Positions 24,565 through 48,417 of a DNA stretch of 64,000 nt are shown one piece after another. The stretch's first letter is position 1; each line of letters starts with the position of its first letter. Below the pieces are notes generated by a model. It had not been told where the DNA came from. It saw nothing but the letters and a program-made list of their open reading frames with translations, and ran no database searches. Location of the stretch: the IMG/VR virus record IMGVR_UViG_3300027985_000918, positions 62,001-126,000 of that record; one strand, given 5' to 3'. The position numbers and the translations under genes are program-made.

Positions 24565-24950
24565 ATGAACACGAGTTAAGAACGGCATCGTGAGGCATTG
24601 AGAGGATGGGCCTGCTGTCGAGTGGTACCTCAACGGGAATCGGCATGAGTGAGGCGCCCCAGCCATTGAGGGGCCTAAACGGACTCAATGGCTGGGGCTG
24701 TGGGACGGACTCAATGGCTGGGGCTGTGGGATCGATCCCACACCGAGGTGATTCGGGAGGCAGCCATGAACATCTGGTAGGTCCAACACCAAAGGTTATA
24801 AAATCCCTGCTGGGCCGTTCGGGCCGTTGAAGGTGGTGGTTCTGAGGCCAGCTCCACCGTGAAGGCCCCCGGTTACGAGGGTGCCGACAGCTTCAAAGCG
24901 TGGTGGTCCCCTGGGGTCTGCACCCGAATCGAGGAGAAATCTGGCCGATG
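24565..24950 (+). pseudogene. decayed HREDGPA-repeat gene remnant(s)
   Basis: Fragments equivalent to EDGPAVEW, IDPTPEVIREAA, QLHREG, CTRIEE with stops/frameshifts; 26-bp tandem duplication 24679-24730. Confidence 0.75.
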
Positions 24951-25577
24951 ATCACCGTACCGACCTTGAAAACCCTCAATGCCTGCTCGGACCAGGTGAC
25001 TCTTTTCGAGTCCTTTTTGGGGGATCGAGAAGGTGTTGATCCCACGCCGGATGTGATCCGGGAAGCAGCCCTGTCCGGCCTAGATGTGAAGTGGGCTCAG
25101 GCTCGGGGGTTGCTCACGATCCCCGACGGGAAGATCACGTACAAAGACAGCCGCAAAGAGTGGTACCTCGATGGGAACCTCCATCGGGAGGATGGCCCCG
25201 CTGTTGAGGGGGCCGACGGAACCCAGGAGTGGTGGCTCAACGGGCAGCTCCATCGGAAGGATGGGCCTGCTGTCGTGCGGTCCGACGGCCGCAGGTTGTG
25301 GTGGCTCTACTGGAAACTCCACCGAGAGGATGGGCCTGCTGTCGAGGGGGCCGATGGTCACCAAGAGTGGTGGGTCAACGGGAAACGCCACCGGGAGGAT
25401 GGGCCGGCGATCGAGTGGGCCAAAGGCTACAAAGAGTGGTACCGCAACGGGAAGCGGCACCGAGAGGACGGACCTGCGATCGAGTGGCCCGACGGCTCCA
25501 AGGAGTGGTACCACAACGGGAAATTCCACCGAGAGGATGGCCCTGCTTTCGAGGGGCCCGACGTCACCCGGTCGTAG
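24948..25577 (+). CDS. HREDGPA-repeat protein 1 (6 repeats, premature stop)
   Basis: N-domain + repeats; TAG TGA where paralogs have TGG TGG. Confidence 0.85.
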   Translation: MITVPTLKTLNACSDQVTLFESFLGDREGVDPTPDVIREAALSGLDVKWAQARGLLTIPDGKITYKDSRKEWYLDGNLHREDGPAVEGADGTQEWWLNGQLHRKDGPAVVRSDGRRLWWLYWKLHREDGPAVEGADGHQEWWVNGKRHREDGPAIEWAKGYKEWYRNGKRHREDGPAIEWPDGSKEWYHNGKFHREDGPAFEGPDVTRS

Positions 25578-25621
25578 TGAACCCACGGAGTCCACATCCA
25601 AACTGAGGAGGAATCTGGCCG

Positions 25622-26226
25622 ATGATCACTATCGAAAAGCTGGAGAAGCTGGGGGTTAGCCCTTACCAGATGGATCTGTTCCTGAAGTTCCTGGGGGTCG
25701 AGAGGGGGTCGAACCTACGCCCGAGGTAGTGCGAGAAGTTGCCCTACTCGGGTTGGATGTTGAGTGGGCCCAGTCTCAGGGTCTGCTACGGATCCCGGAC
25801 GGTATGCTCATCTACAAGGACGGCAGGCGGGAGTGGTGGGTCAATGGGCAGCTCCACCGAGAGGATGGGCCTGCGATCGAGCAGCCCGATGGCACCAAGG
25901 AGTGGTTCTTCCACGGTCAACGCCACCGAGAAGGTGGGCCTGCGGTCGAGGGGGCTGACGGCACCAAGGAGTGGTATCTCCACGGGGAAAGGCACCGTGA
26001 GGATGGCCCCGCTTACGAGGGAACCGATGGTCACCAAGAGTGGTGGGTCAACGGGGAACGCCACCGAGAGGATGGGCCTGCGATCGAGTGGACCGATGGC
26101 CGTCAAGGATGGTATTGCAACGGCCGTAGACACCGTGAGGATGGTCCGGCGGTTGAGTGGGCCGACGGCACCCTAGAGTGGTGGATCCACGGGGCCCGCA
26201 TCCGAATCAAGAGGGGTTACGAATGA
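25622..26226 (+). pseudogene. HREDGPA-repeat protein 2 (5 repeats), frameshift in G-run
   Basis: G5 at 25693-25697, G6 would restore frame. Confidence 0.8.
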
Positions 26227-27035
26227 TCACTGTCGAAAAGCTGGAGAACCTGGGGGTTAGCCCTTACCAGAGGGCTCTGTTCCTGGAGTTTCTCGGGGGT
26301 CGGGAGGGGGTCGAGCCCACGCCGGAGATGATCCGAGAAGCTGCTCTGCTTGGACTGGATGTGGCTTGGGCTCAGGGACTGGGGCTGCTGCAGATCCCCG
26401 ACGGGATGCTCCTCTACAAGGACGGCCTACGGGTGTGGTACCTCGACGGTCAGATCCACCGAGAGGATGGGCCTGCGATCGAGAGATCCAACGGCACCCG
26501 GGAGTGGTGGGTCCGAGGGAAGCTCCACCGAGAGAGCGGACCTGCGATCGAGATGGCCGATGGTCACAAAGAGTGGTTCTTCCACGGTCAACGCCACCGA
26601 GAAGGTGGGCCTGCTTTCGAGATGGCCTCTGGCACCAAGGAGTGGTGGTTCCACGGCCAACGCCACCGTGAGGATGGTCCTGCTTTCGAGTGGGCCGACG
26701 GCTACAAGGCGTGGTGGGTCCACGGGGAACGCCACCGTGAGGATGGTCCGGCAGTCGAGTACGCCAACGGCACCAAGGAGTGGTGGATCCAGGGGCAGCG
26801 TCACCGAGAGGATGGCCCCGCCATGGAGTACGCCAACGGCCACAAGGAGTGGTGGATCCACGGTCGGAGGCACCGTGAGGATGGGCCTGCTATCGTGCGG
26901 GCCAACGGCCGCAAGGAGTGGTACATCCACGGCCGTAGACACCGAGAGGATGGCCCCGCCATGGAGTGGGCCGACGGCTACAAGGAGTGGTGGATCCACG
27001 GGGTCCTCACTCGAACTGAGGAGGGTCCCGAATGA
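26223..27035 (+). CDS. HREDGPA-repeat protein 3 (8 repeats)
   Basis: N-domain + repeats, ATGA overlap. Confidence 0.9.
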   Translation: MITVEKLENLGVSPYQRALFLEFLGGREGVEPTPEMIREAALLGLDVAWAQGLGLLQIPDGMLLYKDGLRVWYLDGQIHREDGPAIERSNGTREWWVRGKLHRESGPAIEMADGHKEWFFHGQRHREGGPAFEMASGTKEWWFHGQRHREDGPAFEWADGYKAWWVHGERHREDGPAVEYANGTKEWWIQGQRHREDGPAMEYANGHKEWWIHGRRHREDGPAIVRANGRKEWYIHGRRHREDGPAMEWADGYKEWWIHGVLTRTEEGPE

Positions 27036-27691
27036 TCACGATCGAAACTCTCCGGAAGTTGAGGGCTTGCCGGTCTCAGGTGGACCTTTTCCGGGAGTTC
27101 TTGGGTGACCGGGAGGGTGTCGAGCCCACGGATGAGATGATCCGGGAAGCTGCCCAGTATGGGCTGGATGTGGCTTGGGCTCAGGGTCAGAATCTTCTGC
27201 GGATCCCGGATGGGATGCTCCTCTACGAGGACGGCAGTCGGGAGTGGTGGTTCAATGGCCAGCTCCACCGTGAGGATGGTCCTGCGATCGAGTGGTCCAC
27301 CGGCACTCTGGAGTGGTTCTTCCACGGCCAGCGACATCGTGAAGAGGGGCCTGCGATCGAGTGGTCCACCGGCACTCTGGAGTGGTTCTTCCACGGTCAA
27401 CTTCACCGAGAGGGTGGCCCCGCCATGGAGTGGCCAGACGGCCACAAGGAGTGGTGGGTCAACGGCCAACTTCACCGAGAGGATGGGCCTGCTTATGAGT
27501 GGTCCGACGGCCACAAGGCGTGGTGGGTCCATGGGTTGCGGCACCGAGAGGATGGGCCTGCTTACGAGGGGGCCGATGGCACCAAGGAGTGGTGGGTCCA
27601 TGGGTTGCGGCACCGAGAGGATGGGCCTGCGGTCGAGTGGGCCAACGGAACCAGGGAGTGGTGGATCCACGGGGTTCGCACCCCGAACTGA
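27032..27691 (+). CDS. HREDGPA-repeat protein 4 (6 repeats)
   Basis: N-domain + repeats; tail shifted at C-run 27681-27684. Confidence 0.9.
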   Translation: MITIETLRKLRACRSQVDLFREFLGDREGVEPTDEMIREAAQYGLDVAWAQGQNLLRIPDGMLLYEDGSREWWFNGQLHREDGPAIEWSTGTLEWFFHGQRHREEGPAIEWSTGTLEWFFHGQLHREGGPAMEWPDGHKEWWVNGQLHREDGPAYEWSDGHKAWWVHGLRHREDGPAYEGADGTKEWWVHGLRHREDGPAVEWANGTREWWIHGVRTPN

Positions 27692-27704: not shown

Positions 27705-28382
27705 ATGATCACGATCGAAACTCTCCGGAAGCGAGAGGCTTGCCAGAATCAGGTGACCCTTTTTGAGTCCTTTCTTGGAGGCCGGGAGGGGGTCGAACCC
27801 ACACCTGAGGTGATCCGAGAGGCAGCCTTGTTTGGGCTGAACGTCCGGTGGGCCCAGGAGCAGGGTTTGCTCACAATCCCCGACGGACAAATCAAATTCA
27901 AATACGGCACCAAGGAGTGGTGGCTCAACGGCCGGTGGCACCGTGAAGACGGGCCTGCTTTCGAGGGATCCTGCGGTCACAAGGAATGGTGGACCCACGG
28001 CCAGAGGCACCGTGAGGATGGGCCTGCGGTGGAGCTGGCCGATGCCCGTCGGGAATGGTGGGTCCACGGAACGAAGCACCGGGATGGCGGGCCCGCTGTC
28101 GAGTGGGCCGACGGGTCCAAAGAATGGTGGGTCGACAGCCAACTCCACCGAGAGGATGGTCCGGCTGTTGAGCGGACCAACGGGTCCAAAGAATGGTGGG
28201 TCAACGGTCAGCTCCATCGAGAGGACGGGCCTGCCATTGAGTACGCCGACGGCACCCGGGAGTGGTACCTCAACGGGGAAAGGCATCGAGAGGGGGGGGC
28301 GGCGATCGAAGCAGCCGACGGCACTCGGGAGTGGTGGGTTCAGGGGGTCCGCATCCGAACTGAGGGGAGGATGGGGAGATGA
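27705..28382 (+). CDS. HREDGPA-repeat protein 5 (6 repeats)
   Basis: ATG 27705 MITIETLRKREAC. Confidence 0.9.
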   Translation: MITIETLRKREACQNQVTLFESFLGGREGVEPTPEVIREAALFGLNVRWAQEQGLLTIPDGQIKFKYGTKEWWLNGRWHREDGPAFEGSCGHKEWWTHGQRHREDGPAVELADARREWWVHGTKHRDGGPAVEWADGSKEWWVDSQLHREDGPAVERTNGSKEWWVNGQLHREDGPAIEYADGTREWYLNGERHREGGAAIEAADGTREWWVQGVRIRTEGRMGR

Positions 28383-29020
28383 TCACGATCGAGATGCTAG
28401 AGAACCTGGGGGCTTGCCAGGACCAGGTGGACCTTTTCCAAGAGTTCCTTGGTGTCCGAGATGGAATCGAGCCTACGCCCGAGGTGGTTCGGGAGGCAGC
28501 CCTGTATGGGTTGGATGTCGAGTGGATCCAGTCTCTGGGTTTGCTGCAGATCCCCGACGGGATGCTCCTCTACAAGGACGGCTCTAAGGAGTGGTATCTC
28601 GATGGAAAGCTCCACCGAGAGGGCGGGCCTGCGATCGAGTGGCCCGATGGCACTCTTGAGTGGTGGGTCCACGGGGTGAACCACCGTGTGGAAGGGCCTG
28701 CGGTCGAGAGGGCCAACGGAACCCTGGAGTGGTGGCTCAATGGTCTCAGGCACCGTGAAGGGGGCCCTGCGATTGAGTATTCCCACGGCACCAGGGAATG
28801 GTGGTTTAACGGCCAGCTCCATCGGGAGGATGGGCCTGCGATTGAGAGGGCCTCCGGCACCAGAGTTTGGTACCTCGACGGGTTGCGGCACCGAGGGGAT
28901 GGGCCGGCTTACGAGTGGCCCGACGGCACCAGGGAGTGGTGGACCCACGGGCAGTACATCCGAACTGAGGGGGACTCCCCAGTCCTCAGTCTGCTGCAGA
29001 TCCTGTACGGGGGGAGTTAA
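28379..29020 (+). CDS. HREDGPA-repeat protein 6 (5 repeats)
   Basis: N-domain + repeats; tail DSPVLSLLQILYGGS. Confidence 0.9.
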   Translation: MITIEMLENLGACQDQVDLFQEFLGVRDGIEPTPEVVREAALYGLDVEWIQSLGLLQIPDGMLLYKDGSKEWYLDGKLHREGGPAIEWPDGTLEWWVHGVNHRVEGPAVERANGTLEWWLNGLRHREGGPAIEYSHGTREWWFNGQLHREDGPAIERASGTRVWYLDGLRHRGDGPAYEWPDGTREWWTHGQYIRTEGDSPVLSLLQILYGGS

Positions 29021-29118: not shown

Positions 29119-29144
29119 GGTAACCCTAACCCCCTGCTGAGTAG
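29119..29144 (+). promoter_or_regulatory. internal phage promoter-like motif (duplicate at 39306-39331)
   Basis: GGTAACCCTAACCCCCTGCTGAGTAG, identical at both sites. Confidence 0.75.
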
Positions 29145-29209
29145 GCGTCTCAGAACGATGGCTCAGAGGAGCCAATAGGAAACGTCACTGAGCAAAAGGG
29201 GAATGTCAG

Positions 29210-29746
29210 ATGATCACCCGTAAAACGTTGGAAGGCCTGTGGGTTCACTCCGTACAGTGGGATCTCTTCGAGCAGTTCCTGGGTGATCGAGAAGGGGTCG
29301 AACCTACTCCGGATGTGATCCGGGAAGCCGCACTGTTCGGACTGGATGTTCAAGGGGGCCGGGATGCCGGCCTGTTCCAACTCCCCGATGGGCCGATCGT
29401 GTTCAAGGACGGTCACCGGGTGAACTACCTCAACGGTCAGATCCACTGCGAGGATGGCCCGGCCATCGTGTGGCCCGATGGCCACCAAGAGTGGTGGGTT
29501 CACGATGAACGTCATTGTGAGGATGGGCCGGCTATCCTGCGGCCTAACGGCGACCGGGAGTGGTGGGTCAACGGGCAGAAGGACCGAGCGGATGGTCCGG
29601 CCATCGAGCGTGCCAATGGCCGCAAGGAGTGGTGGGTCAACGGGGAGCGCATCAAGATCGAAGGGGCCGACTACAGCAAGGAATGGTGGTTTCACGGGAA
29701 GCCCCACCGTGAAAACCCCCCGGCCGTTATGATGGAAGAACAGTAG
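29210..29746 (+). CDS. HREDGPA-repeat protein 7 (divergent, HCEDG type)
   Basis: MITRKTLEGLWVHS N-domain, about 4 repeats. Confidence 0.9.
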   Translation: MITRKTLEGLWVHSVQWDLFEQFLGDREGVEPTPDVIREAALFGLDVQGGRDAGLFQLPDGPIVFKDGHRVNYLNGQIHCEDGPAIVWPDGHQEWWVHDERHCEDGPAILRPNGDREWWVNGQKDRADGPAIERANGRKEWWVNGERIKIEGADYSKEWWFHGKPHRENPPAVMMEEQ

Positions 29747-29871: not shown

Positions 29872-30333
29872 ATGATCACTATCCAGACCCTACGGGAGCT
29901 GGGAGCTTGCTCTAATCAGGTGGAGTTGTTCCGGGAGTTCCTCGGGGACCGAGAGGGGGTCGAGCCCACTCCCGAGATGATCCGAGAGGCCGCTTTGTAC
30001 GGGCTGAATATCCTGTGGGCCCAAGGCAAGGGTCTTTTGGATTTCCCCGATGGTCTATTGGTCTACAAAGACGGTTGGAGAGTGTGGCACCTCAACGGGA
30101 AGCTCCACCGTGAGGATGGGCCTACCATCGAGTGGCCGGACGGGACTCGGGAGTGGTATGCCTATGGCCAACTCCATCGGAAGGATGGGCCGGCAGTCGA
30201 ATGGGCCAACGGCCGTAAGGAGTGGTTCTTCCACGGTTATAGGCACCGAGAGGATGGACCGGCTTTCGAGGGACTCTGCGGTATCAAAGCGTGGTATATC
30301 AACGGTCAACACATTAAGGGATCCCTCTCATGA
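29872..30333 (+). CDS. HREDGPA-repeat protein 8 (3 repeats)
   Basis: N-domain + repeats. Confidence 0.9.
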   Translation: MITIQTLRELGACSNQVELFREFLGDREGVEPTPEMIREAALYGLNILWAQGKGLLDFPDGLLVYKDGWRVWHLNGKLHREDGPTIEWPDGTREWYAYGQLHRKDGPAVEWANGRKEWFFHGYRHREDGPAFEGLCGIKAWYINGQHIKGSLS

Positions 30334-30959
30334 TCACTATCCAGACCCTGCTGGAACTGGGGGCTTGCCCCAATCAGGTGACCCTCTTCGAGGATTTCCT
30401 TGGTGTCCGAGAGGGAGTTGAACCCACTCCCGATGTGATCCGGCTGGCCGCTCTGTATGGTTTGGCTATCGAGTGGGCCCAGTCACACGGTTTGCTCACC
30501 ATCCCCGATGGGATAATCCTCTACAAGAACGGCCACAAATCGTGGTATACCCACGGCCAACTCCACCGTGAGGACGGGCCGGCAATTGAGTGGCCCGACG
30601 GCACTCGGGAGTGGTGGATCCACGGCCGGAGACACCGAGAGGAGGGGCCTGCCATTGATGGGGTCAAAGGCCACCAAGAATGGTGGTGCAATGGCCAACT
30701 TCACCGAGAAGCTGGACCGGCTATCAAATTGGGCCGAGGCCATCAAGAGTGGTTTTTCCAAGGCCGGCCCCATCGTGAGGACGGGCCAGCTATCGAGAGG
30801 CCCAATGGCTTCCGGGCATGGTACTTCAACGGGGTGAGGCATCGAGAGGGAGGGCCTGCGATCGAGTGGGCCGATGGTACCAAGGAGTGGTGGGTCAACG
30901 GGATCCGGCAGTGCTGTGGGGAAAGCCTAATAGTGGCAAAGAAAGCAGCAACATCCTAG
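30330..30959 (+). CDS. HREDGPA-repeat protein 9 (5 repeats)
   Basis: N-domain + repeats. Confidence 0.9.
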   Translation: MITIQTLLELGACPNQVTLFEDFLGVREGVEPTPDVIRLAALYGLAIEWAQSHGLLTIPDGIILYKNGHKSWYTHGQLHREDGPAIEWPDGTREWWIHGRRHREEGPAIDGVKGHQEWWCNGQLHREAGPAIKLGRGHQEWFFQGRPHREDGPAIERPNGFRAWYFNGVRHREGGPAIEWADGTKEWWVNGIRQCCGESLIVAKKAATS

Positions 30960-39206: not shown

Positions 39207-39395
39207 TGGTAATGCCAATCGCAACAGCCTCCCTCACTGAGGGGGAGGGGGAGCCCCCCCTTATCATGTGACTTATCAGTTTCTCCCCCAAGATGAAGAA
39301 TTCCGGGTAACCCTAACCCCCTGCTGAGTAGGCACCCCAGAACGATGGCTCAGAGGAGCCAATAAAAAACGGCACTGAGCAAAAAGGAATGTCAG

Positions 39396-41126: not shown

Positions 41127-41905
41127 TCACCGTACAGACATTGACCGGACTCGAAGCCTGCCACAACCAGGTGGCCCTTTTCCGGGAGTTTCTCGGGGGT
41201 CGTGAAGGGATCGAACCCACACCAGATGTTATTCGGGAGGCAGCCCTATACGGGCTGAATGTCAAGTGGGCGCAAGCCCAGGGGCTGTTGGAATTCCCCG
41301 ATGGGGTGCTCGTCTACAAGGGCGGCCGTAAGGAGTGGTACCTCGACGGTCAGCTCCATCGAGAGGGCGGGCCAGCGTTCGAGTGGTCCGACGATATCAA
41401 GGAGTGGTGGTTCCACGGCCGTCTCCACCGTGAGGATGGTCCTGCTGTCGAGCAGGAAGATGGGGGCAAGGAATGGTACATCCACGGGGTGCGGCACCGT
41501 GTGGGTGGTCCCGCCATCGAGACTGCCTATGGGCGTAAGGAGTGGAGGGTCAAGGGGCAGCTCCACCGTGAAGATGGGCCCGCTTATGAGTCTCCCTTAG
41601 TTAAGATGTGGTGCTTCCACGACCTGCTCCACCGAAAGGATGGCCCGGCAGTTGAGCTTCCTAACGGAACCGAGGAGTGGTACCTCAACGGGGAACGCCA
41701 CCGAGTTGGGGGTCCGGCGATCGAGTGGGCCGACGGCCGCAAGGAGTGGTGGTTCAACGGGGAACGCCACCGTGAAGACGGCCCCGCTGTTGAACGGTCT
41801 GACGGCACCAAGGAGTGGTGGACTCACGGGGTGAAGCATCCGGATCGGAAAGGAATTCCGATGATCACTACCCAGTCCCTTCGGATTGAGGAAGATTCCC
41901 AATGA
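41123..41905 (+). CDS. HREDGPA-repeat protein 22 (7 repeats), fused to collapsed minigene
   Basis: GTG 41123; tail contains second MITTQ start at 41861. Confidence 0.85.
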   Translation: MITVQTLTGLEACHNQVALFREFLGGREGIEPTPDVIREAALYGLNVKWAQAQGLLEFPDGVLVYKGGRKEWYLDGQLHREGGPAFEWSDDIKEWWFHGRLHREDGPAVEQEDGGKEWYIHGVRHRVGGPAIETAYGRKEWRVKGQLHREDGPAYESPLVKMWCFHDLLHRKDGPAVELPNGTEEWYLNGERHRVGGPAIEWADGRKEWWFNGERHREDGPAVERSDGTKEWWTHGVKHPDRKGIPMITTQSLRIEEDSQ

Positions 41906-42369
41906 TCACTACCCAGACTCTTCAAAACCTGGGGGCTTGCCGAGACCAGGTTATTCTCTTCCAAGAGTTCTTGAGAGATCGGGAGGGTGTCGAGCCCACG
42001 CCCGAGGTGGTCCGAGAGGCAGCCCTGTATGGGCTGGATGTTGAGTGGGCCTTGTACCATGACATTCTGCGGATCCCCGATGGGATGCTCGTCTACAAGG
42101 ACGGCCGCAAGGAGTGGTACCTCGACGGTCATCTCCACAGAGAGGATGGGCCAGCGGTCGTGACTGCCGTGGGCACCCGGGAGTGGTGGCTCCACGGCCG
42201 GTGGCATCGTGAGGGGGGGCCTGCTTACGAGGGGGCCTGCGGTCACAAAGAGTGGTGGTTCCACGGCCAGAGGCACCGTGAGGATGGTCCTGCGGTCGAG
42301 TGGGCCAACGGACACAAAGAGTGGTGGCTCGACGGGCAGCACACCCCAACCGAAGGAGCAGATCAATGA
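41902..42369 (+). CDS. HREDGPA-repeat protein 23 (3 repeats)
   Basis: N-domain + repeats. Confidence 0.9.
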   Translation: MITTQTLQNLGACRDQVILFQEFLRDREGVEPTPEVVREAALYGLDVEWALYHDILRIPDGMLVYKDGRKEWYLDGHLHREDGPAVVTAVGTREWWLHGRWHREGGPAYEGACGHKEWWFHGQRHREDGPAVEWANGHKEWWLDGQHTPTEGADQ

Positions 42370-43247
42370 TCACAATCCAAAATTTGAAGGACCTCAGGGC
42401 TTGCTCGGACCAGGTGGATCTCTTTGGGGAGTTTCTCGGGAGTCGAGAGGGGATCGAACCCACGCCCGATGCGGTGCGGGAAGCCGCCCTGTTTGGGCTG
42501 GACTTCGAGTGGGCCCAGTGCAAAGGTTTGCTCACGATCCCGGACGGGATGATCACGTACAAGGACGGCTCTCAGTTGTATTACCTCGACGGCTGTCTCC
42601 ACCGTGAAGACGGGGCTGCGGTCGAGTGGGCCGACGGCTCCCGAGAGTGGTGGGTCCAGGGCCAGGCCCACCGAGTGGGCGGGGCGGCTTTCGAGGGGGC
42701 CGACGGTCGTCGAGAATGGTGGGTCAACGGCCAGCGGCACCGTGAAGACGGGCCGGCTTTCGAGGAATCTGACGGCAGCTCGGAGTGGTACTTCCACGAC
42801 CATCTCCACCGAGAAGACGGGCCCGCTATCGAGATGTCCTCCGGCACCAAGGAGTGGTGGATCCACGGGGTGAGGCATCGTGAGGAGGGACCAGCGGTCG
42901 AGCGGAACTTGGGATCCAAAGAGTGGTGGGTCAAGGGCCTGCGCCACCGTGAAGGGGCCCCTGCTGTCGAAGGGGTCGACGGAACCAAAGCGTGGTATTC
43001 CTACGGTCAACTCCACCGAGTTGACGGCCCGGCGATCGAGAGAGCCGGAGGCCTCAAAGAATGGTTCATCCACGGTCTACATCACCGAGAAGACGGGCCC
43101 GCTATCGAAAGGCCCGATGGAACTTGGGAGTGGCGGATCCGAGGCCTTATCCACCGTGGTGATGGCCCTGCCATCAAACGGAAAGATGGAACCCAAGAGT
43201 GGTGGGTCCACGGGCAGCGCACCCAAATCGAGAGACCATGCCGATGA
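42366..43247 (+). CDS. HREDGPA-repeat protein 24 (9 repeats)
   Basis: ATG 42366. Confidence 0.9.
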   Translation: MITIQNLKDLRACSDQVDLFGEFLGSREGIEPTPDAVREAALFGLDFEWAQCKGLLTIPDGMITYKDGSQLYYLDGCLHREDGAAVEWADGSREWWVQGQAHRVGGAAFEGADGRREWWVNGQRHREDGPAFEESDGSSEWYFHDHLHREDGPAIEMSSGTKEWWIHGVRHREEGPAVERNLGSKEWWVKGLRHREGAPAVEGVDGTKAWYSYGQLHRVDGPAIERAGGLKEWFIHGLHHREDGPAIERPDGTWEWRIRGLIHRGDGPAIKRKDGTQEWWVHGQRTQIERPCR

Positions 43248-43918
43248 TCACTATCAGCACCTTGAAAGGCCTCAAGGCCTGCTCGGACCAGGTCACCCTT
43301 TTCCGGGAGTTCCTCGGAGATCGAGAGGGTGTCGAGCCCACGCCGGAGGTAGTTCGAGAGGCAGCCCTGTTTGGGCTGGATGTGAAGTGGGCCCAGTATC
43401 AGGGTCTGCTGCGGATTCCAGACGGGAAGATCACATACAAGGACGACTCCCGAGAGTGGTGGATCCACGGGAAGCTCCATCGGGAGGATGGGCCTGCGAT
43501 CGAAGGGTCCAACGGTTCCAAGGAGTGGTACCTCCAGGGGAAGTTCCATCGTGAGGACGGGCCGGCTTACGAGTGGGCCAACGGCTCCCGAGAGTGGTAT
43601 ATCCACGGCCTGAGGCACCGGGAGGATGGGCCGGCTGCCGAGTACGCCAACGGCACCAAAATGTGGTACCTCAACGGGAAGCTCCACCGAGAGGATGGCC
43701 CCGCTGTTGAAGGGGCCGACGGCTCCCGGTCGTGGTGGATCCACGGCCTGAGGCACAGGGAGGATGGGCCGGCGATCGAGTGGGATGACGGCTGGAAGGA
43801 GTGGTACTTCCAAGGACAGAGGCACCGTGAGGGGGGGCCTGCGATCGAGGGTCCCGACGGCTTCCGGGAGTGGTGGAGCCACGGGCAGCTCATCCCCATT
43901 AAGGAGGAACCCAAATGA
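43244..43918 (+). CDS. HREDGPA-repeat protein 25 (6 repeats)
   Basis: ATG 43244. Confidence 0.9.
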   Translation: MITISTLKGLKACSDQVTLFREFLGDREGVEPTPEVVREAALFGLDVKWAQYQGLLRIPDGKITYKDDSREWWIHGKLHREDGPAIEGSNGSKEWYLQGKFHREDGPAYEWANGSREWYIHGLRHREDGPAAEYANGTKMWYLNGKLHREDGPAVEGADGSRSWWIHGLRHREDGPAIEWDDGWKEWYFQGQRHREGGPAIEGPDGFREWWSHGQLIPIKEEPK

Positions 43919-44382
43919 TCACTGTCCAGACCTTGGTTGATTTGGAAGCCTGCTCGGACCAGGTCACTCTTTTCCGGGAGTTCCTGGGAGATCGAGAGGG
44001 TGTTGAGCCCACGCCGGAGGTGATCCGTGAGGCAGCTTTGTACGGGTTGGACATTTGGTGGGCCCAACACATGGGCCTGCTCACGATCCCGGACGGGAAG
44101 ACCACGTACAAGGATGGCTCTCAGTCGTGGCACCTCGAAGGGAAGCTCCATCGGGAGGATGGCCCTGCGATCGAGTGGACCAATGGCACCCGGTCTTGGC
44201 GGATCAACGGCCTGAGGCACAGGGAAGGGGGGCCGGCAATCGAGTACGCCGACGGCAGCCGGGAATGGTGGCTCAACGGAAAGCACCACCGAGAGGATGG
44301 GCCGGCTTTCGAGGGGGCCGACGGCCACCGGGAGTGGTGGACCCACGGGGTTTGTACCCGAATTGAGAGGGGGGACGAATGA
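43915..44382 (+). CDS. HREDGPA-repeat protein 26 (3 repeats)
   Basis: N-domain + repeats. Confidence 0.9.
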   Translation: MITVQTLVDLEACSDQVTLFREFLGDREGVEPTPEVIREAALYGLDIWWAQHMGLLTIPDGKTTYKDGSQSWHLEGKLHREDGPAIEWTNGTRSWRINGLRHREGGPAIEYADGSREWWLNGKHHREDGPAFEGADGHREWWTHGVCTRIERGDE

Positions 44383-45329
44383 TCACTGTCAACACTTTGA
44401 TGAACCTCGATGCCTGTCCTGAACAAACCACCCTTTTCCTAGAGTTCCTCAGGGATCGAGAGGGTGTTGAGCCCACGCCGGAGGTGATCCGTGAGGCAGC
44501 CTTGTACGGGCTGAACGTTGGGTGGGCTCAACTCAAGGGGTTGCTCACGATCCCGGACGGTCTGCTGGTGTGCAAAGACGGCATTCGGGAGTGGTACCTC
44601 GAAGGGAAGCTCCATCGGGAGGACGGGCCTGCTGTCGAGCGGGACGACGGCCGCAAAGAGTGGTACCTCCACGGGAAGCCCCACCGAGAGGATGGGCCTG
44701 CTTTCGAGGGGGCCGACGGCTCCCGAATTTGGTGTCTTAACGGGGAGGTCTCCAGGGAAGATGGGCCTGCGATCGAGCGGGCCGACGGCTCCACGGAGTG
44801 GTACCTCAACGGGAAGCGGCACCGTGAGGACGGGCCGGCGTTCGAGTGGGCCAACGGCTCCAAAGCGTGGTGGCTCAACGGTCAGCGGCACCGAAAGGAT
44901 GGGCCTGCTGTTGAGCGGGCCGGTGGTACCCGGGAGTGGTGGATCCACGGGGTGAGACATCGTGAGGAGGGACCAGCGGTCGAGCGGAATTCGGGATCCA
45001 AGGAGTGGTGGGTCAAGGGCCTTCTCCACCGTGAGGGGGCCCCTGCTGTCGAAGGGGCCAACGGAACCAAAATGTGGTATTCCTACGGCGTTCTCCACCG
45101 AGAGGATGGGCCGGCAGTCGAGATTGCCGGGGGCCGCAAAGAATGGTTCATCCACGGTCTACCTCACCGAGAGTCTGGGCCAGCAATCGAATGGCCCAAT
45201 GGAACTTGGGAGTGGCGGATCCGAGGCCTCCTCCACCGTGATGATGGACCTGCTGTCAAACGGGAGGATGGAACCCAAGAGTGGTGGGCCCACGGTCAGC
45301 GTACCCGAATTGAGAGGCCCTGCCGATGA
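44379..45329 (+). CDS. HREDGPA-repeat protein 27 (10 repeats)
   Basis: N-domain + repeats. Confidence 0.9.
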   Translation: MITVNTLMNLDACPEQTTLFLEFLRDREGVEPTPEVIREAALYGLNVGWAQLKGLLTIPDGLLVCKDGIREWYLEGKLHREDGPAVERDDGRKEWYLHGKPHREDGPAFEGADGSRIWCLNGEVSREDGPAIERADGSTEWYLNGKRHREDGPAFEWANGSKAWWLNGQRHRKDGPAVERAGGTREWWIHGVRHREEGPAVERNSGSKEWWVKGLLHREGAPAVEGANGTKMWYSYGVLHREDGPAVEIAGGRKEWFIHGLPHRESGPAIEWPNGTWEWRIRGLLHRDDGPAVKREDGTQEWWAHGQRTRIERPCR

Positions 45330-46069
45330 TCACGATCGAAACTCTCCGGAACCGGGGGGCTTGCCAGAGTCAGGTGACCCTTTTTGAGTCCTTTCTTGGA
45401 GGTCGGGAGGGGGTCGAACCCACACCTGAGGTGATCCGAGAGGCAGCCTTGTTTGGGCTGAACGTCCGGTGGGCCAAGGAGCAGGGTCTGCTCACGATCC
45501 CCGATGGGCAGATCGAATTCAAGGATGGTCACAAGGAGTGGTATCTCCACGGCCTGAAGCACCGAGAGAACGGGCCAGCAGTCGAGTGGGGCTGCGGCAC
45601 CAAGGGGTGGTATTCCCACGGCCAGCGGCACCGTGAAGACGGTCCTGCTATCGAGATGGCCGACGGGTCCAAGGCGTGGTGGATTCACGGGAAAGCCCAC
45701 CGAGAGGATGGGCCTGCGATCGAGTGGAATGACGGGTCCAAAGAGTGGTGGATCAATGGTCAGCCCCACCGAGAGTCGGAGCCGGCGATCGAGTATGCCG
45801 ACGGCACTCGGGAGTGGTGGACCAACGGCCAGCTCCACCGAGAGGATGGGCCGGCGATCGAGAGGAGCGACGGCACCAAGGAGTGGTACTTCCAAAGTCA
45901 GCTCCACCGAGATGGCGGGCCAGCGGTCGAAACGGCTTACGGACGTAAGGAGTGGTACCGCAATGGGGAACTCCACCGTGAAGACGGACCTGCTTACGAG
46001 TCCCCCACTGGTTACAGGGTGTGGTGGGTAAACGGGCGCTGGATCCGGGCCGAGAGGAGAAGCAAATGA
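45326..46069 (+). CDS. HREDGPA-repeat protein 28 (7 repeats)
   Basis: N-domain close to protein 5. Confidence 0.9.
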   Translation: MITIETLRNRGACQSQVTLFESFLGGREGVEPTPEVIREAALFGLNVRWAKEQGLLTIPDGQIEFKDGHKEWYLHGLKHRENGPAVEWGCGTKGWYSHGQRHREDGPAIEMADGSKAWWIHGKAHREDGPAIEWNDGSKEWWINGQPHRESEPAIEYADGTREWWTNGQLHREDGPAIERSDGTKEWYFQSQLHRDGGPAVETAYGRKEWYRNGELHREDGPAYESPTGYRVWWVNGRWIRAERRSK

Positions 46070-46812
46070 TCACGGTAGGGATTCTGAAAAACCTGGAGGA
46101 TTGCCCCGATCAGCTCTCTCTCTTTCGGAAGTTCCTTGGAGGCCGGAAGGGGGTCGAACCCACACCTGAGGTGATCCGAGAGGCAGCCCTGTTTGGGCTG
46201 GATGTGAAGTGGGCCCAGTATCAGGGTCTGCTCACGATCCCGGACGGGAAGATCACGTACAAAGACAGCCACAAGGAGTGGTATCTCAACGGGAAGTTCC
46301 ATCGGGAGGATGGGCCTGCTTACGAGGGGGCCGATGGATCCCGGGAGTGGTGGCTCAACGGGCAGCTCCACCGAGAGGATGGGCCTGCTGTCGAGGGGGC
46401 CGATGGCACCCGGTCTTGGTGGATCAACGGCCAGAGGCACCGAGAGGACGGGCCGGCTATTGAGGTGGCAGACGGCCATCGAGAGTGGTGGGCCAATAAT
46501 CAGCTCCACCGGGAAGACGGGCCGGCAATCGAGGGTCTTTTTGGTTTTCAGCATTGGTATCACCACGGTTATCTTCACCGAGAAGAAGGGCCGGCGGTTG
46601 TGGGCACCGAGGGATCCAAGGCGTGGTGGTCTTACGGCTTACTCCACCGAGCGGGGGGGCCTGCGATCGAGGGAGCCGACGGCACCAAGGAGTGGTACAG
46701 CCACGGTTTGTGCCACCGTGAGGACGGGCCGGCTATCGAGCGGGCCAACGGCATCAAGGAATGGTGGACCCACGGAGTCCGCACCCGAACTGAGGAGGGG
46801 AACCCTCAATGA
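46066..46812 (+). CDS. HREDGPA-repeat protein 29 (7 repeats)
   Basis: ATG 46066. Confidence 0.9.
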   Translation: MITVGILKNLEDCPDQLSLFRKFLGGRKGVEPTPEVIREAALFGLDVKWAQYQGLLTIPDGKITYKDSHKEWYLNGKFHREDGPAYEGADGSREWWLNGQLHREDGPAVEGADGTRSWWINGQRHREDGPAIEVADGHREWWANNQLHREDGPAIEGLFGFQHWYHHGYLHREEGPAVVGTEGSKAWWSYGLLHRAGGPAIEGADGTKEWYSHGLCHREDGPAIERANGIKEWWTHGVRTRTEEGNPQ

Positions 46813-47555
46813 TCACTGTCAACACTTTGGTGGCTCGCAAGGCATGCTCGGATCAGGTCACACTCTTTCAGAAGTTCCTGGGAGATCGAGAGGGGGTTGA
46901 TCCCACACCCGACGTGGTGAGGGAAGCAGCCCTGCTTGGGTTGGATGTCGAGTGGGCCCAATACAGGGGTCTGCTCACGATCCCCGACGGGATGATTATC
47001 TATAGGGACGGCACAAAGAGGTGGTGGCTCAACGGGAAGCGGCACCGAGAGGATGGGCCTGCTGTCGAGTGGGCTGACGGCTCTCGGGAATGGTGGGTTC
47101 ACTACCAGCTTCATCGAGAAGCTGGGCCGGCTGTCGAGCGGGCCGACGGCCGCAAGGAGTGGTACCTCCACGGGAAGCTCCACCGTGGAGATGGTCCGGC
47201 TATCGAGGGGGCCGACGGTCGGAGGGAATGGTGGATCAACGGCCAGTACCACAGGGAGGATGAGCCTGCTGTCGAGTGGGCCGGCGGAACCCGAGAGTGG
47301 TGGCTCCACGGCCTTCTCCACCGAGAGGATGGGCCGGCGATCGAGTACGCCAACGGCACCAAAATGTGGTACCTCAACGGGAAGCTCCACCGAGAGGATG
47401 GGCCTGCTGTCGAGTACGCCGACGGAACCCAGGAGTGGTACCTCAACGGGAAGCTCCACCGTGGAGATGGTCCGGCTATCGAGGGGGCCGACGGCTCTCG
47501 GGAGTGGTGGACCCACGGACAGTTCATACGATCTGAGGAGGGGAACCCTCAATGA
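46809..47555 (+). CDS. HREDGPA-repeat protein 30 (7 repeats)
   Basis: N-domain + repeats. Confidence 0.9.
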   Translation: MITVNTLVARKACSDQVTLFQKFLGDREGVDPTPDVVREAALLGLDVEWAQYRGLLTIPDGMIIYRDGTKRWWLNGKRHREDGPAVEWADGSREWWVHYQLHREAGPAVERADGRKEWYLHGKLHRGDGPAIEGADGRREWWINGQYHREDEPAVEWAGGTREWWLHGLLHREDGPAIEYANGTKMWYLNGKLHREDGPAVEYADGTQEWYLNGKLHRGDGPAIEGADGSREWWTHGQFIRSEEGNPQ

Positions 47556-47929
47556 TCACTGTCAACACTTTGGTGGCTCGCAAGGCATGCTCGGATCAGG
47601 TCACACTCTTTCAGGAGTTCCTCAGGGATCGAGAGGGTGTCGAGCCCACACCCGACGTGGTGAAGGAAGCAGCCCAGTACGGGTTGGACGTGAGGTGGGC
47701 CCAATACAGGGGTCTGATCACGATCCCCGACGGGCTGCTCGTCTTCAAAGACGGCACTCGGGAGTGGTACCTCAACGGTCTGAGACACCGAGAGGATGGG
47801 CCTGCGATCGAGGGGGTCGACGGCCGCAAGGAGTGGTTCCTCTACGGGAAGCGGCACCGAGAGGATGGGCCGGCTTTCGAGGGGTCCGACGGAACTCGGG
47901 AGTGGTGGATCCACGGCCTGTTCTATTGA
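47552..47929 (+). pseudogene. HREDGPA-repeat protein 31, truncated after 2 repeats
   Basis: TGA where consensus has CGA, followed by GAGGATGG remnant; 5' end near-identical to protein 30. Confidence 0.75.
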
Positions 47930-48033
47930 GAGGATGGCCTGCCTCTAAACAAAGGCTATCCAATCCCAATCTTTCCTTTGCAGGTAACCCCTCCGGGTTG
48001 GTGAGTAGGCACCCTGAGCAAAGGAAGAAGGCA

Positions 48034-48417
48034 ATGCGAAAAGAATGGCGTGATGAGAATGGGCTCCTTCATCGAGAGGGGGGAGCCGCAATCGAAGCGA
48101 GCAGCGGGAAGACGTATTACCGTCATGGTCTTGTCCATTGTGAAGATGGGCCAGCGATTGTGGGGACCGACGGCTATCGAGAGTGGCGCCTCAACGGGCA
48201 GAGGCACAGGGTAGATGGACCGGCTATCGAATGGCCGGATGGAACCAAGGAATGGTGGCTCAACGGCCAGAGGCATCGGGTAGAAGGGCCGGCCATTGAG
48301 CAACCCAATGGCTTTCAAGCGTGGTATCTCAACGGTCTGCTGCACAAGGAAGATGGCCCTGCTATCCGGTGGCCTTATGGTTTTCAGGAGTGGTACATCC
48401 ATGGGGTGCGGCAGTAA
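48034..48417 (+). CDS. HREDGPA-repeat protein 32, lacking N-domain (5 repeats)
   Basis: MRKEWRDENGLLHREGG; own motif at 47983-48008. Confidence 0.85.
   Translation: MRKEWRDENGLLHREGGAAIEASSGKTYYRHGLVHCEDGPAIVGTDGYREWRLNGQRHRVDGPAIEWPDGTKEWWLNGQRHRVEGPAIEQPNGFQAWYLNGLLHKEDGPAIRWPYGFQEWYIHGVRQ

What the first reader, a model, noticed from the sequence alone, without database searches (positions are those of the whole stretch)
24565..48417. 24-kb tandem repertoire of 32 paralogous 23-aa-repeat proteins
Seen: 32 co-oriented genes plus a decayed remnant, mostly coupled by (A/G)TGA overlaps, with each tail (IRTEEG..) encoding the next RBS. Each has a conserved ~60-aa N-domain and 2-15 repeats of consensus EWWLNGQLHREDGPAIEWADGTK (69 nt), ~200 repeats in total. 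W, G, HR and GPA are nearly fixed while intervening positions vary widely. Known: this resembles MORN-variant beta-hairpin repeats as in YwqK-type antitoxin/immunity proteins (from memory, not searched). Inference: a scaffold-plus-variable-surface binder library, e.g. to neutralise diverse host defence toxins or sensors. Over a third of the window devoted to one family is exceptional.
Basis: partly seen in the sequence, partly recalled or inferred. Interest (0 to 1): 0.92.

Follow-up and report, generated by a model that had tools for sequence, protein, structure and literature searches.

The report
32-gene MORN-like repeat array in phage
A 402-kb uncultured phage devotes 24 kb to 32 back-to-back, long-diverged copies of one soluble repeat-protein gene, a gene-family expansion not seen at this scale in the phage collections searched; it most likely makes a battery of protein binders for host takeover or counter-defence, but no function has been tested.

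Summary
Window 24566-48417 (+ strand) holds a decayed remnant and 32 co-oriented paralogs. Of these, 28 are intact genes with the N-domain, 3 are frameshifted at homopolymer runs, and 1 has repeats only. They contain 205 full 23-aa units (2-15 per gene). 22 of 31 junctions are ATGA/GTGA overlaps.

The copies are old: units average 67.5% nt identity and nothing over 143 nt reaches 85%. This is not an assembly artefact. The genes are under purifying selection (dN/dS 0.2-0.3).

AlphaFold (pLDDT 94.8) gives a 4-helix head plus a beta-hairpin array. Foldseek matches MORN1, junctophilin and MORN4. By sequence the proteins fail Pfam MORN and MORN_2, so they are MORN-like but not proven YwqK members.

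The repeat type is widespread (over 7,700 proteins, including phages and giant viruses). The head domain is rare (58 relatives among 1.84 billion representatives), has no Pfam or PDB match, and is fused elsewhere to other repeats or to Imm5-like immunity domains.

The flanks carry rIIA/B, RNA ligase, PNK, Macro and PARP-like genes.

Best reading: a polycistronic, "polyimmunity-like" binder battery. Variable positions show relaxed constraint (omega about 0.5), not demonstrated positive selection. The function is inferred.

The parts
24494..24520 (+). promoter-like motif GGTAACCC-N12-GAGTAGG at the head of the array
   Evidence: 6 copies in the window, all + strand, 0 expected by chance
24566..24947 (+). 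decayed remnant(s): repeats-only relic followed by N-domain/tail relic, with many stops
24948..25577 (+). paralog 1, 209 aa, 6 units; ends at a double stop just before its ancestral tail
25622..26226 (+). paralog 2, frameshifted at a G5 run (~25694); 5 units in the downstream frame
26223..27035 (+). paralog 3, 270 aa, 8 units
27032..27691 (+). paralog 4, 219 aa, 6 units
27705..28382 (+). paralog 5, 225 aa, 6 units
28379..29020 (+). paralog 6, 213 aa, 5 units; first gene of the duplicated 4-gene block
29119..29145 (+). promoter-like motif upstream of paralog 7
29210..29746 (+). paralog 7, 178 aa, divergent type (N-domain lacks the Cys; degenerate units)
29872..30333 (+). paralog 8, 153 aa, 3 units
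30330..30959 (+). paralog 9, 209 aa, 5 units
31105..32124 (+). paralog 10, 339 aa, 11 units
32121..33422 (+). paralog 11, 433 aa, 15 units (longest), GTG start
33419..34441 (+). paralog 12, 340 aa, 11 units
34438..35250 (+). paralog 13, 270 aa, 8 units
35247..35927 (+). paralog 14, 226 aa, 6 units
35924..36532 (+). paralog 15, 202 aa, 5 units
36529..37341 (+). paralog 16, 270 aa, 8 units
37338..38429 (+). paralog 17, 363 aa, 12 units, GTG start
38426..39206 (+). paralog 18, frameshifted at a G5 run (~39013); about 7 units over two frames
39306..39332 (+). promoter-like motif upstream of paralog 19
39396..39932 (+). paralog 19, 178 aa, divergent type; 92% aa identical to paralog 7
40051..40508 (+). 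paralog 20, frameshifted at a T6 run (~40174); 3 units in the downstream frame
40521..41126 (+). paralog 21, 201 aa, 5 units
41123..41905 (+). paralog 22, 260 aa, 7 units, GTG start; tail carries a duplicated copy of the next gene's start
41902..42369 (+). paralog 23, 155 aa, 3 units
42366..43247 (+). paralog 24, 293 aa, 9 units
43244..43918 (+). paralog 25, 224 aa, 6 units; the member modelled with AlphaFold2
43915..44382 (+). paralog 26, 155 aa, 3 units
44379..45329 (+). paralog 27, 316 aa, 10 units
45326..46069 (+). paralog 28, 247 aa, 7 units
46066..46812 (+). paralog 29, 248 aa, 7 units
46809..47555 (+). paralog 30, 248 aa, 7 units
47552..47929 (+). paralog 31, 125 aa, 2 units (shortest)
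47983..48009 (+). promoter-like motif upstream of the last gene
48034..48417 (+). paralog 32, 127 aa, repeats only (no N-domain), 4-5 units

Best explanation
This is a lineage-specific tandem expansion, in a 402-kb uncultured phage, of one family of soluble cytoplasmic proteins.

**Architecture (shown).** Each protein has a conserved ~58-aa four-helix head. This head is a rare domain absent from Pfam and without a PDB fold match. It is followed by a rigid MORN-like beta-hairpin array of 2-15 units of 23 aa. Nine positions of each unit build the scaffold. Eleven positions differ from unit to unit and from paralog to paralog.

**Expression (partly shown, partly inferred).** The genes are arranged for co-expression. 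They are linked by 4-nt start/stop overlaps, and each Shine-Dalgarno lies in the previous gene's tail. A recurring promoter-like motif suggests a few transcription units.

**Function (inferred).** The array works as a battery of non-enzymatic binders, a viral counterpart of bacterial homogeneous polyimmunity loci. Made together, probably early in infection, the paralogs would present many different beta-sheet surfaces that bind and block a range of host or competitor proteins. Toxin effectors or sensors of defence systems are the leading candidates. The shared head would give every paralog one common interaction or localisation.

**Evolution (shown).** The array grew by repeated gene and segment duplication followed by long divergence, with some members now decaying (birth-and-death).
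For: **Anatomy**
- 32 paralogs, 205 units and 22 of 31 overlapping junctions.

**Real and old**
- Units average 67.5% nt identity, and only 0.05% of unit pairs exceed 90%.
- The largest internal duplication is 2.2 kb at 82.6% identity. Nothing longer than 143 nt reaches 85%.
- An independent ENA library matches window 43497-44076 at 100%.

**Selection**
- Paralog pairs give dN/dS of 0.22-0.33 overall, 0.06-0.08 at scaffold positions, about 0.5 at variable positions and about 0.2 in the head.
- 204 of 205 units are distinct, and unit pairs differ at 7.8 of the 11 variable positions on average.

**Fold**
- The AF2 model has pLDDT 94.8 and pTM 0.82.
- Foldseek matches MORN1, junctophilin-2 and MORN4 at prob 1.0.
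- There is no TM segment or signal peptide (maximum KD19 of 1.37), and no enzymatic Pfam domain was found in the members scanned.

**Head domain**
- Only 58 relatives at E<=1e-3 among 1.84 billion representatives.
- In those relatives it is fused to the same repeats, to other repeat types (including LRV), or to Imm5_like immunity domains at E 7e-14 and 2e-10.
- Another contig carries at least 4 tandem head-plus-repeat paralogs.

**Context**
- Neighbours include rIIA/rIIB, Macro, RNA ligase, PNK/phosphatase and a PARP-like gene.

**Concept**
- Homogeneous polyimmunity loci are tandem paralogs of one immunity family, thought to be read as one polycistronic message (PMC3482391).
- YwqK is the cognate immunity protein that protects against the YwqJ toxin and co-purifies with its toxin domain (bioRxiv 10.64898/2026.09.29.755374).
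Against: - There are no expression, binding or phenotype data. The phage is uncultured and its host is unknown.
- Variable positions have omega of about 0.5. This is relaxed constraint, not demonstrated positive selection, and the estimates are crude and partly saturated.
- The proteins fail the Pfam MORN_2 and MORN thresholds and match nothing in PADLOC.
- The immunity link is indirect: 2 of 10 head-domain relatives scanned carry Imm5_like, and one homolog carries a JGI "YwqK" name.
- The highly conserved head and the conserved H-R-E-D-G-P-A face could mean that all paralogs bind one common partner.
- The same repeat is fused to many unrelated domains in cells and giant viruses, so it has no single function.
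- Three members are frameshifted and one is truncated, so not all copies are maintained.
Confidence: 0.45

Rival explanations
1. Substrate-receptor (adaptor) family. The conserved head docks every paralog onto one common machine, such as a host protease, a phage enzyme like the nearby ADP-ribosyltransferase, or RNA polymerase. The variable repeat arm recruits different targets to that machine. This would be the phage analogue of the F-box-MORN and ankyrin-PRANC multigene families of large eukaryotic viruses.
For: - The head is the most uniformly conserved part across paralogs (77% mean column identity, omega about 0.2).
- The head is modular. It is fused to at least four different repeat or helical tails in other genomes.
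- The high pTM (0.82) suggests a defined head-arm geometry.
- BFVD holds F-box+MORN proteins of pitho- and pandoraviruses among the structural matches.
- Giant-virus repeat families have been described (PMC5753266).
Against: - The head has no Pfam hit and no PDB fold match (best E 3.8), so nothing ties it to any docking function.
- No partner has been identified.
- The repeats-only genes (48034-48417 and genes in L012) would need another explanation.
Confidence: 0.2
2. Structural or tethering proteins. Like eukaryotic MORN proteins, the rigid arrays of graded length (2-15 units) would act as spacers or scaffolds. They could tether membranes or a phage replication compartment, or bind a repetitive polymer (nucleic acid, cell-envelope polymer, poly-ADP-ribose) through the conserved W/H/R/E/D ladder.
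For: - The best structural matches are scaffold and tether proteins: MORN1, junctophilin and radial-spoke proteins.
- Charged and aromatic residues are strictly conserved in every unit.
- Unit number varies widely.
- PARP-like and Macro genes are nearby.
Against: - A scaffold does not need 32 diverged paralogs with 204 distinct units.
- There is no membrane-binding segment, and the proteins are only mildly acidic (pI about 5.7, about -1 charge per unit).
- The conserved residues are shared by thousands of homologs with unrelated partners, which points to a fold-building role.
Confidence: 0.13
3. Frozen gene accordion. A single useful gene was amplified for dosage, as poxviruses do under host pressure. 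The copies have since drifted, most are redundant, and they are slowly decaying.
For: - There are pseudogenes and relics: 3 frameshifts, a premature stop and a remnant.
- Junction duplications and a segmental duplication are footprints of unequal recombination.
- Omega at variable positions is below 1 but high.
Against: - Synonymous divergence is near saturation, yet 28 of 32 reading frames are intact and dN/dS is 0.2-0.3. Redundant copies would not be kept open that long.
- Similarity does not fall with distance along the array (r = -0.015).
- Translational coupling is preserved at 22 junctions.
Confidence: 0.12
4. Assembly artefact (collapse or expansion of a repeat), or non-coding repetitive DNA.
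For: - The contig comes from short-read metagenomics.
- The two IMG/VR records are identical and may be one assembly.
- Three frameshifts lie in homopolymers and could be sequencing errors.
Against: - The copies are only about 68-80% identical, so an assembler sees them as unique sequence.
- The reading frames, codon bias (GC3 about 0.74) and start/stop overlaps are coherent.
- An independent library matches 580 nt across a gene junction at 100%.
Confidence: 0.03

Closest known systems
Eukaryotic MORN-repeat proteins (MORN1, junctophilin-2, MORN4; Pfam PF02493)
   Same: Both have a 23-residue beta-hairpin unit forming an elongated antiparallel sheet. They are the top Foldseek PDB matches (E 7e-8 to 3e-4, prob 1.0).
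   Different: There is no PF02493 sequence hit even at E<=10. The signature is different (W-x3-G-x2-HR-x2-GPA-x-E-x3-G). TM-scores are only 0.3-0.4. The setting is phage and cytoplasmic, with a novel helical head.
YwqK / MORN_2 (PF07661, COG2849) immunity proteins of polymorphic toxin systems
   Same: Both have a 22-23-aa G-rich hairpin repeat and are small, non-enzymatic, cytoplasmic proteins. One homolog of the window's repeat is named YwqK by JGI, and a few homologs carry precomputed PF07661 hits. YwqK is the cognate immunity protein that protects against the YwqJ deaminase toxin and co-purifies with its toxin domain (bioRxiv 10.64898/2026.09.29.755374).
   Different: The window proteins score 15.6 and 8.7 bits against a cut-off of 29.6. 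No toxin gene is adjacent. There are 32 tandem copies rather than one. The extra N-terminal domain is not part of YwqK.
Homogeneous polyimmunity loci of bacteria (Zhang et al. 2012, PMC3482391)
   Same: Both are tandem co-oriented paralogs of one small binder family with no toxin gene in the locus. Both appear to be read as one polycistronic message, and both show copy-number turnover.
   Different: The described loci are in bacterial chromosomes and involve SUKH, Imm6, Imm11, Imm28, Imm33, Imm36 and Imm41 families. Here the locus is in a phage, the family is not an established immunity family, and at 32 genes it is far longer than the 'four or more' that defines an extended locus.
MORN2 gene expansions in invasive Fusobacterium (PMC4222103)
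   Same: Both are large lineage-specific expansions of 22-23-aa MORN-type repeat genes, with variable repeat number per gene and clustering in the genome.
   Different: 87% of the Fusobacterium proteins have signal peptides and are thought to act at the cell surface. They are spread over a bacterial genome (about 32 genes per genome). The phage proteins have no signal peptide and form a single array.
Repeat-domain multigene families of giant viruses and poxviruses (ankyrin, F-box+MORN; PMC5753266)
   Same: Both occur in large viral genomes that devote a sizeable share to paralogous repeat proteins. Both have an adaptor-plus-repeat architecture. The same HRxDGPA-type repeat is found in megavirus, mimivirus R871 and Marseillevirus proteins (35-37% identity).
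   Different: Those are eukaryotic viruses with a ubiquitin-system logic. The head domain here is not an F-box, and no comparable family has been reported or found for a phage in the collections searched.
Solitary small HRxDGPA-repeat proteins of phages (Celeribacter phage P12053L gp09, Agrobacterium phage Atu_ph07, uncultured Caudovirales)
   Same: The repeat subtype is the same (44-55% identity) and so is the early-region context among small hypothetical genes.
   Different: Those proteins are about 100 aa, lack the head domain, and occur at 1-9 scattered copies per genome. All are annotated as hypothetical.

Membership tests
MORN repeat (Pfam PF02493) | Sequence match to the family HMM at or above the gathering score | tested here: not met
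   No PF02493 hit for three members, even at E<=10.
MORN repeat (Pfam PF02493) | Units of about 23 residues, each a beta-hairpin, stacking into an elongated antiparallel sheet | tested here: met
   The AF2 model has pLDDT 94.8 with a regular hairpin pattern. Foldseek matches 6t68, 6t69, 9uo9, 7rxe and 6jle at prob 1.0.
MORN_2 / YwqK (PF07661, COG2849) | Sequence match to PF07661 at or above the gathering score (29.6 bits) | tested here: not met
   Scores were 15.6 bits (433-aa member) and 8.7 bits (224-aa member), with no hit for the 363-aa member.
MORN_2 / YwqK (PF07661, COG2849) | 22-23-residue period with conserved Gly turns and aromatic residues | tested here: met
   The period is a strict 23 aa (69 nt). 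W2, G6, G13 and G21 are 93-98% conserved.
MORN_2 / YwqK (PF07661, COG2849) | Encoded next to its cognate toxin gene (YwqJ-type LXG deaminase or another polymorphic toxin) | tested here: not met
   The array holds only paralogs. The larger flanking ORFs scanned gave rII, RNA ligase, Macro, PARP-like, PNK and ATPases, and no LXG or deaminase toxin. Small ORFs were not all scanned.
MORN_2 / YwqK (PF07661, COG2849) | Binds and neutralises a toxin | not testable with these tools
   This needs co-expression or binding assays.
DUF6745 (PF20530) | Match over the 206-position domain profile | tested here: not met
   Hits cover only profile positions 62-87, which is one repeat-like stretch. One of five members tested reaches the cut-off (28.4 against 27).
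Homogeneous polyimmunity locus (PMC3482391) | Four or more tandem, co-oriented paralogs of one family with no toxin gene in the locus, apparently polycistronic | tested here: met
   There are 32 paralogs, 22 of 31 junctions overlap by 4 nt, and there are no interleaved genes.
Homogeneous polyimmunity locus (PMC3482391) | The family is an established immunity family | tested here: inconclusive
   The link is indirect only: head-domain relatives are fused to Imm5_like PF21805, one homolog carries a JGI 'YwqK' name, and MORN_2 hits are sub-threshold.
Homogeneous polyimmunity locus (PMC3482391) | Located in a bacterial genome exposed to polymorphic toxins | tested here: not met
   The contig is an IMG/VR viral genome of 402,383 bp with rIIA/rIIB and other phage genes.
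F-box/PRANC-type viral substrate-receptor families | A recognisable adaptor domain (F-box, PRANC, BTB) joined to the repeats | tested here: not met
   The head domain has no Pfam hit and no PDB fold match (best E 3.8). The architecture is only analogous.

The most novel reading that the evidence does not exclude
The array is the first phage example of a viral "receptor library". A previously undescribed four-helix head domain plugs every paralog into one common phage or host machine. The 32 different MORN-like arms each capture a different host defence or toxin protein. One co-expressed polycistronic battery would then give broad, pre-emptive counter-defence. This would be a phage counterpart of both bacterial polyimmunity loci and the F-box/ankyrin families of giant viruses.
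Probability: 0.22. Interest if true: 0.85.

Novelty: new variant of a known kind. Interest (0 to 1): 0.62.

Why it matters
**What is new.** Multigene families of repeat proteins are a hallmark of giant eukaryotic viruses, and polyimmunity loci are a hallmark of bacteria. A 32-member, 24-kb, translationally coupled family in a phage would show that huge phages use the same strategy.

**What it offers for experiments.**
- A ready-made natural library: 28 intact paralogs and 204 distinct repeat surfaces on one scaffold.
- This library could be screened against defence systems and toxins.
- It also defines a small head domain, with no Pfam or PDB match, whose partner could reveal a new hub of phage-host conflict.
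- The repeat itself occurs in over 7,700 proteins with no solved structure and no known function, so any functional result would annotate a large dark family.

Tried and rejected
- **Megablast of the first 24 kb against 50,697 phage records:** no match. The phage has no close cultured relative.
- **Sequence searches of PDB** with a single member and with the family profile: no hit even at E<=10.
- **PHROGs, NCBIfam and PADLOC on members:** nothing meaningful.
- **Head domain.** There is no PDB fold match. The word-based search found only the contig's own proteins. IMG/VR pattern scans found only the same contig. The JGI metagenome scan found nothing. The broad head-domain alignments were too divergent for pattern scans of genomes. 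A single-protein genome scan gave one uninformative hit.
- **DNA-mimic idea** (a regularly acidic rod, like Ocr or pentapeptide proteins): weakened. The proteins are only mildly acidic, with pI 4.8-6.3 and about -1 charge per unit.
- **Recent gene conversion or homogenisation:** rejected for most of the array. It remains possible for paralogs 7 and 19 and their upstream region.
- **Simple step-wise tandem duplication:** not supported, since similarity does not correlate with gene order.
- **Diversity-generating retroelement:** not pursued. Copies differ at synonymous sites as much as at variable codons, which is not the DGR pattern. No reverse transcriptase was seen among the ORFs scanned, but not every ORF was scanned.
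- **Sigma-70 promoters and intrinsic terminators:** no promoters found, and terminator counts are at chance level.
- **Rfam and tRNA:** no Rfam family and no tRNA in the window.
- **Literature:** no paper mentions DUF6745.

Full report
**1. What is there**

The window is GC-rich (about 61%). From about 24 kb to 50 kb it has a strong positive GC skew, as expected for one long + strand transcription block.

A loose repeat motif occurs 168 times on the + strand between 25173 and 48265, and once on the - strand elsewhere. Stop-to-stop ORFs, a start-motif search and hand inspection of the gaps give 32 co-oriented genes:
- 28 intact genes begin M/V-I-T-x-x-T-L and carry a conserved head of about 58 aa.
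- 3 genes carry the head but change frame (25622-26226, 38426-39206, 40051-40508).
- 1 gene (48034-48417) consists of repeats only.
- Upstream, 24566-24947 is a stop-ridden relic containing recognisable repeat, head and tail pieces.

All three frameshifts lie in G5 or T6 runs. They may be real slippage mutations or sequencing errors.

A profile built from 153 regex-anchored units finds 205 full 23-aa units in strict register. The first always starts at residue 71. There are 2-15 units per gene, and each gene ends in a 7-8-residue partial unit and a short tail.

The consensus is EWWLHGQRHREDGPAIEWADGTK. W2, G6, H9, R10, G13, P14, A15, E17 and G21 are 91-100% conserved. Eleven positions carry 1.8-2.75 bits of entropy.

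22 of 31 junctions are 4-nt ATGA/GTGA overlaps.

The array spans 23,853 nt, which is 37% of the window.

**2. Not an artefact, and old**

Repeat units average 67.5% nucleotide identity, and only 0.05% of unit pairs exceed 90%.

A self-BLAST finds one large internal duplication: a four-gene block, 28612-30827 against 38797-41018, at 82.6% identity. Nothing longer than 143 nt reaches 85%. Sequences this different do not collapse or expand in assembly.

The contig is IMGVR_UViG_3300027985_000918 (402,383 bp), and the window is contig 62001-126000. A second IMG/VR record is identical over the three overlapping loci compared. This may be the same assembly.

Independent ENA contigs from a loxP mate-pair library match window 43497-44076, across a gene junction, at 100%.

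A 33rd, solitary paralog lies about 6 kb upstream of the window.

Head-region similarity does not decrease with distance along the array (r = -0.015). The array was therefore shuffled by segmental events rather than built by simple neighbour duplication. A copy of the next gene's start inside the tail of gene 41123-41905 is a footprint of such events.

**3. Selection**

For the three gene pairs of the duplicated block that could be compared over most of their length:

| Partition | dN/dS |
|---|---|
| Whole gene | 0.22-0.33 |
| Scaffold positions (two diverged pairs) | 0.06-0.08 |
| Variable positions | about 0.5 |
| Head domain | about 0.2 |

The fourth pair, compared over 44 head residues only, gave 0.13. 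Column-wise pN/pS over all units gives the same picture: 0.01-0.2 at scaffold positions and 0.4-1.4 at most variable positions (one column reaches 3.4). Synonymous sites are near saturation, so these values are crude.

The paralogs are therefore maintained as proteins, and the variable positions are relaxed. Positive selection is not demonstrated.

204 of 205 units are distinct, and unit pairs differ at 7.8 of 11 variable positions on average.

**4. Fold and family**

AlphaFold2 on the paralog alignment gives a confident model (pLDDT 94.8, pTM 0.82). It has four short helices (residues 1-55) followed by a regular beta-hairpin array.

Foldseek against the PDB returns MORN1 of Trypanosoma, Toxoplasma and Plasmodium, junctophilin-2, MORN4 and radial-spoke MORN proteins (E 7e-8 to 1e-3, prob 1.0).

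Against predicted viral structures, the best matches carry the same repeat at 35-53% identity. They include uncultured Caudovirales, Powai lake megavirus, mimivirus R871, Marseillevirus, Atu_ph07 and Celeribacter phage P12053L. Among the weaker structural matches (14-17% identity) are F-box+MORN and F-box proteins of pitho- and pandoraviruses.

By sequence the picture is weaker:
- Pfam MORN gives no hit.
- MORN_2 scores 15.6 and 8.7 bits against a cut-off of 29.6.
- DUF6745 matches only profile positions 62-87.
- There is no PDB sequence relative, even with a profile.

The repeat subtype is nevertheless very common. More than 7,700 proteins matched among the 8,000 candidates scored. They are fused to DUF7666, RING fingers, TM segments and other domains, and one is named "antitoxin YwqK" by JGI.

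In cultured phages the repeat occurs in hypothetical proteins of about 100 aa in early-type regions.

The fair description is a MORN-like, YwqK-like repeat subtype that current models do not capture. It is not a proven member of either family.

**5. The head domain**

A profile of the 28 heads, searched against 1.84 billion representative proteins, finds only 58 proteins at E<=1e-3, and 6 at E<=1e-10, some of them the contig's own or loxP-chimeric fragments of the same phage.

The relatives align convincingly (I-T-x3-L-x4-A-C-x2-Q-V-x-L-F ... T ... A ... G-L-D-x-x-W-A). All are small proteins in which the head is followed by one of several tails:
- the same HRxDGPA repeats;
- helical "YAYRYARxVD"-type repeats;
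- short Ala/Trp-rich helical repeats;
- LRV repeats (PF01816);
- an Imm5_like immunity domain (PF21805, E 7e-14 and 2e-10).

The head alone folds confidently (pLDDT 92.4) but has no PDB match (best E 3.8). It also has no Pfam hit.

The contexts of relatives look phage-like, with runs of small co-directional unknown genes:
- One 2.6-kb contig of 41% GC carries at least four tandem head-plus-repeat paralogs directly after an RlaP gene.
- A marine contig has one head-plus-repeat gene and two repeats-only genes near an RNA ligase.

Tandem multiplication is therefore a recurring habit of this family, but nothing approaches 32 copies. In three other contigs of 390-585 kb, the repeat genes were solitary or paired within 20 kb.

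**6. Surroundings**

The window also encodes the following:

| Coordinates | Gene or hit |
|---|---|
| 798-4447 | rIIA/rIIB |
| 17552-18343 (-) | Macro domain protein |
| 19206-19898 (-) | RNA ligase |
| 23015-24199 (-) | weak sigma/HTH-like protein, divergent from the array |
| 56414-57331 | PARP-like ADP-ribosyltransferase |
| 58694-59545 (-) and 59973-61328 (-) | ABC/AAA ATPases |
| 61395-62375 (-) | polynucleotide kinase/phosphatase |

From general knowledge, rII, RNA ligase plus PNK, and Macro proteins are classic phage answers to abortive-infection, anticodon-nuclease and ADP-ribosylation defences. The array therefore sits in a host-takeover and counter-defence neighbourhood. This is circumstantial.

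An invariant motif, AGGTAACCC-N12-GAGTAGG, occurs six times in the window, always on the + strand and 25-100 nt before a start codon. It is found at the head of the array (24494), before the two divergent-type genes (29119, 39306), before the last gene (47983), and at 19940 and 48450. It also occurs before the outlying 33rd paralog. None is expected by chance.

The motif is most simply a phage-specific promoter that divides the array into a few polycistronic units. There are no sigma-70-type promoters and no excess of intrinsic terminators.

**7. How it most likely works**

*Shown:* a co-oriented, translationally coupled family of soluble proteins (no TM or signal peptide) with no enzymatic domain in the members scanned. 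Each has a conserved head and a rigid repeat arm, and the arm's non-scaffold positions differ in nearly every unit.

*Inferred:* the arms are binding surfaces, and the array is a battery of binders produced together. The closest functional concept is the homogeneous polyimmunity locus of bacteria, meaning tandem paralogs of one immunity family read as one message and thought to pre-empt many toxins (PMC3482391). Here that concept would be transplanted into a phage.

The head's fusion elsewhere to Imm5-like domains, and the YwqK-like nature of the repeat, fit this reading. They do not prove it.

The conserved head implies something common to all paralogs. The adaptor (substrate-receptor) model is therefore a serious rival or refinement. 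Scaffold or tether, dosage-accordion and artefact readings are less likely, for the reasons given under rivals.

**8. Novelty**

*Known:*
- The fold is known.
- The repeat subtype is widespread but uncharacterised.
- Repeat-protein multigene families are known from giant viruses (PMC5753266).
- MORN2 expansions are known from Fusobacterium (PMC4222103).

*New:*
- the head domain;
- the head-plus-MORN-like architecture;
- the scale and organisation of the expansion in a phage.

I rate it a new variant of a known kind. The interest is moderate to high but rests on an untested function.

Noticed in passing
window 19940-19966, 24494-24520, 29119-29145, 39306-39332, 47983-48009, 48450-48476; L005 ~9910: An invariant motif (A)GGTAACCC-N12-GAGTAGG occurs six times in the window and once in L005, always on the + strand and 25-100 nt upstream of a start codon. 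None is expected by chance. It looks like a phage-specific (ECF-like?) promoter, and the neighbouring gene 23015-24199 (-) has weak sigma-factor/HTH hits.
   Followed up: partly
L005:10001-10525 (contig ~55947-56470, about 6 kb upstream of the window): A 33rd, solitary paralog of the 'divergent type' (like 29210-29746 and 39396-39932). It has the same conserved ~105-nt upstream region, including the promoter-like motif.
   Followed up: partly
window 29021-29746 vs 39207-39932: Divergent-type genes 7 and 19 and their 190-nt upstream regions are 92-94% identical (dS 0.14). They sit inside a duplicated block whose other genes have dS of about 0.85. This suggests local gene conversion or a second, more recent duplication.
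   Followed up: partly
window ~25694, ~39013, ~40174: All three frameshifts in array genes fall in homopolymer runs (G5, G5, T6). They could be slippage-prone switches or sequencing errors.
   Followed up: partly
window 41850-41905: The tail of gene 41123-41905 contains a copy of the next gene's first residues (MITTQ.L). This small junction duplication is a footprint of unequal recombination.
   Followed up: no
window 17552-18343 (-), 19206-19898 (-), 56414-57331 (+), 61395-62375 (-), 798-4447 (+): Genes for a Macro domain, RNA ligase, PARP-like ADP-ribosyltransferase, polynucleotide kinase/phosphatase and rIIA/rIIB flank the array. Together they form an RNA-repair, ADP-ribose and anti-abortive-infection gene set.
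   Followed up: partly
L010:207-2637; L012:6021-8558; L013: Distant head-domain relatives sit next to RNA-repair genes in two unrelated contigs. RlaP lies directly upstream of four tandem paralogs in L010, and an RNA ligase lies about 700 nt upstream in L012/L013. This echoes the RNA ligase 4.7 kb from the array here.
   Followed up: no
L016, L017 (ENA ERZ926216); proteins P0122, P0123: These contigs are mate-pair chimeras joined by a loxP linker. The peptide 'ITSYSIHYTKLY' at the end of the two database proteins is translated loxP, not biology.
   Followed up: yes
L021:3822-17329 (390-kb ENA contig): Another very large contig carries at least nine YopX-domain paralogs within 20 kb. Paralog arrays of other families therefore exist in huge phage-like genomes.
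   Followed up: no
L012:4338-4793 and 12647-13036; P0124: Some repeat proteins, with or without the head, end in a conserved C-terminal module (C-x-G-K-[IVL]-[IV]-E-[IM]-[DE]-G ... Y-[QR]-L). This may be a second accessory domain of the repeat family.
   Followed up: no
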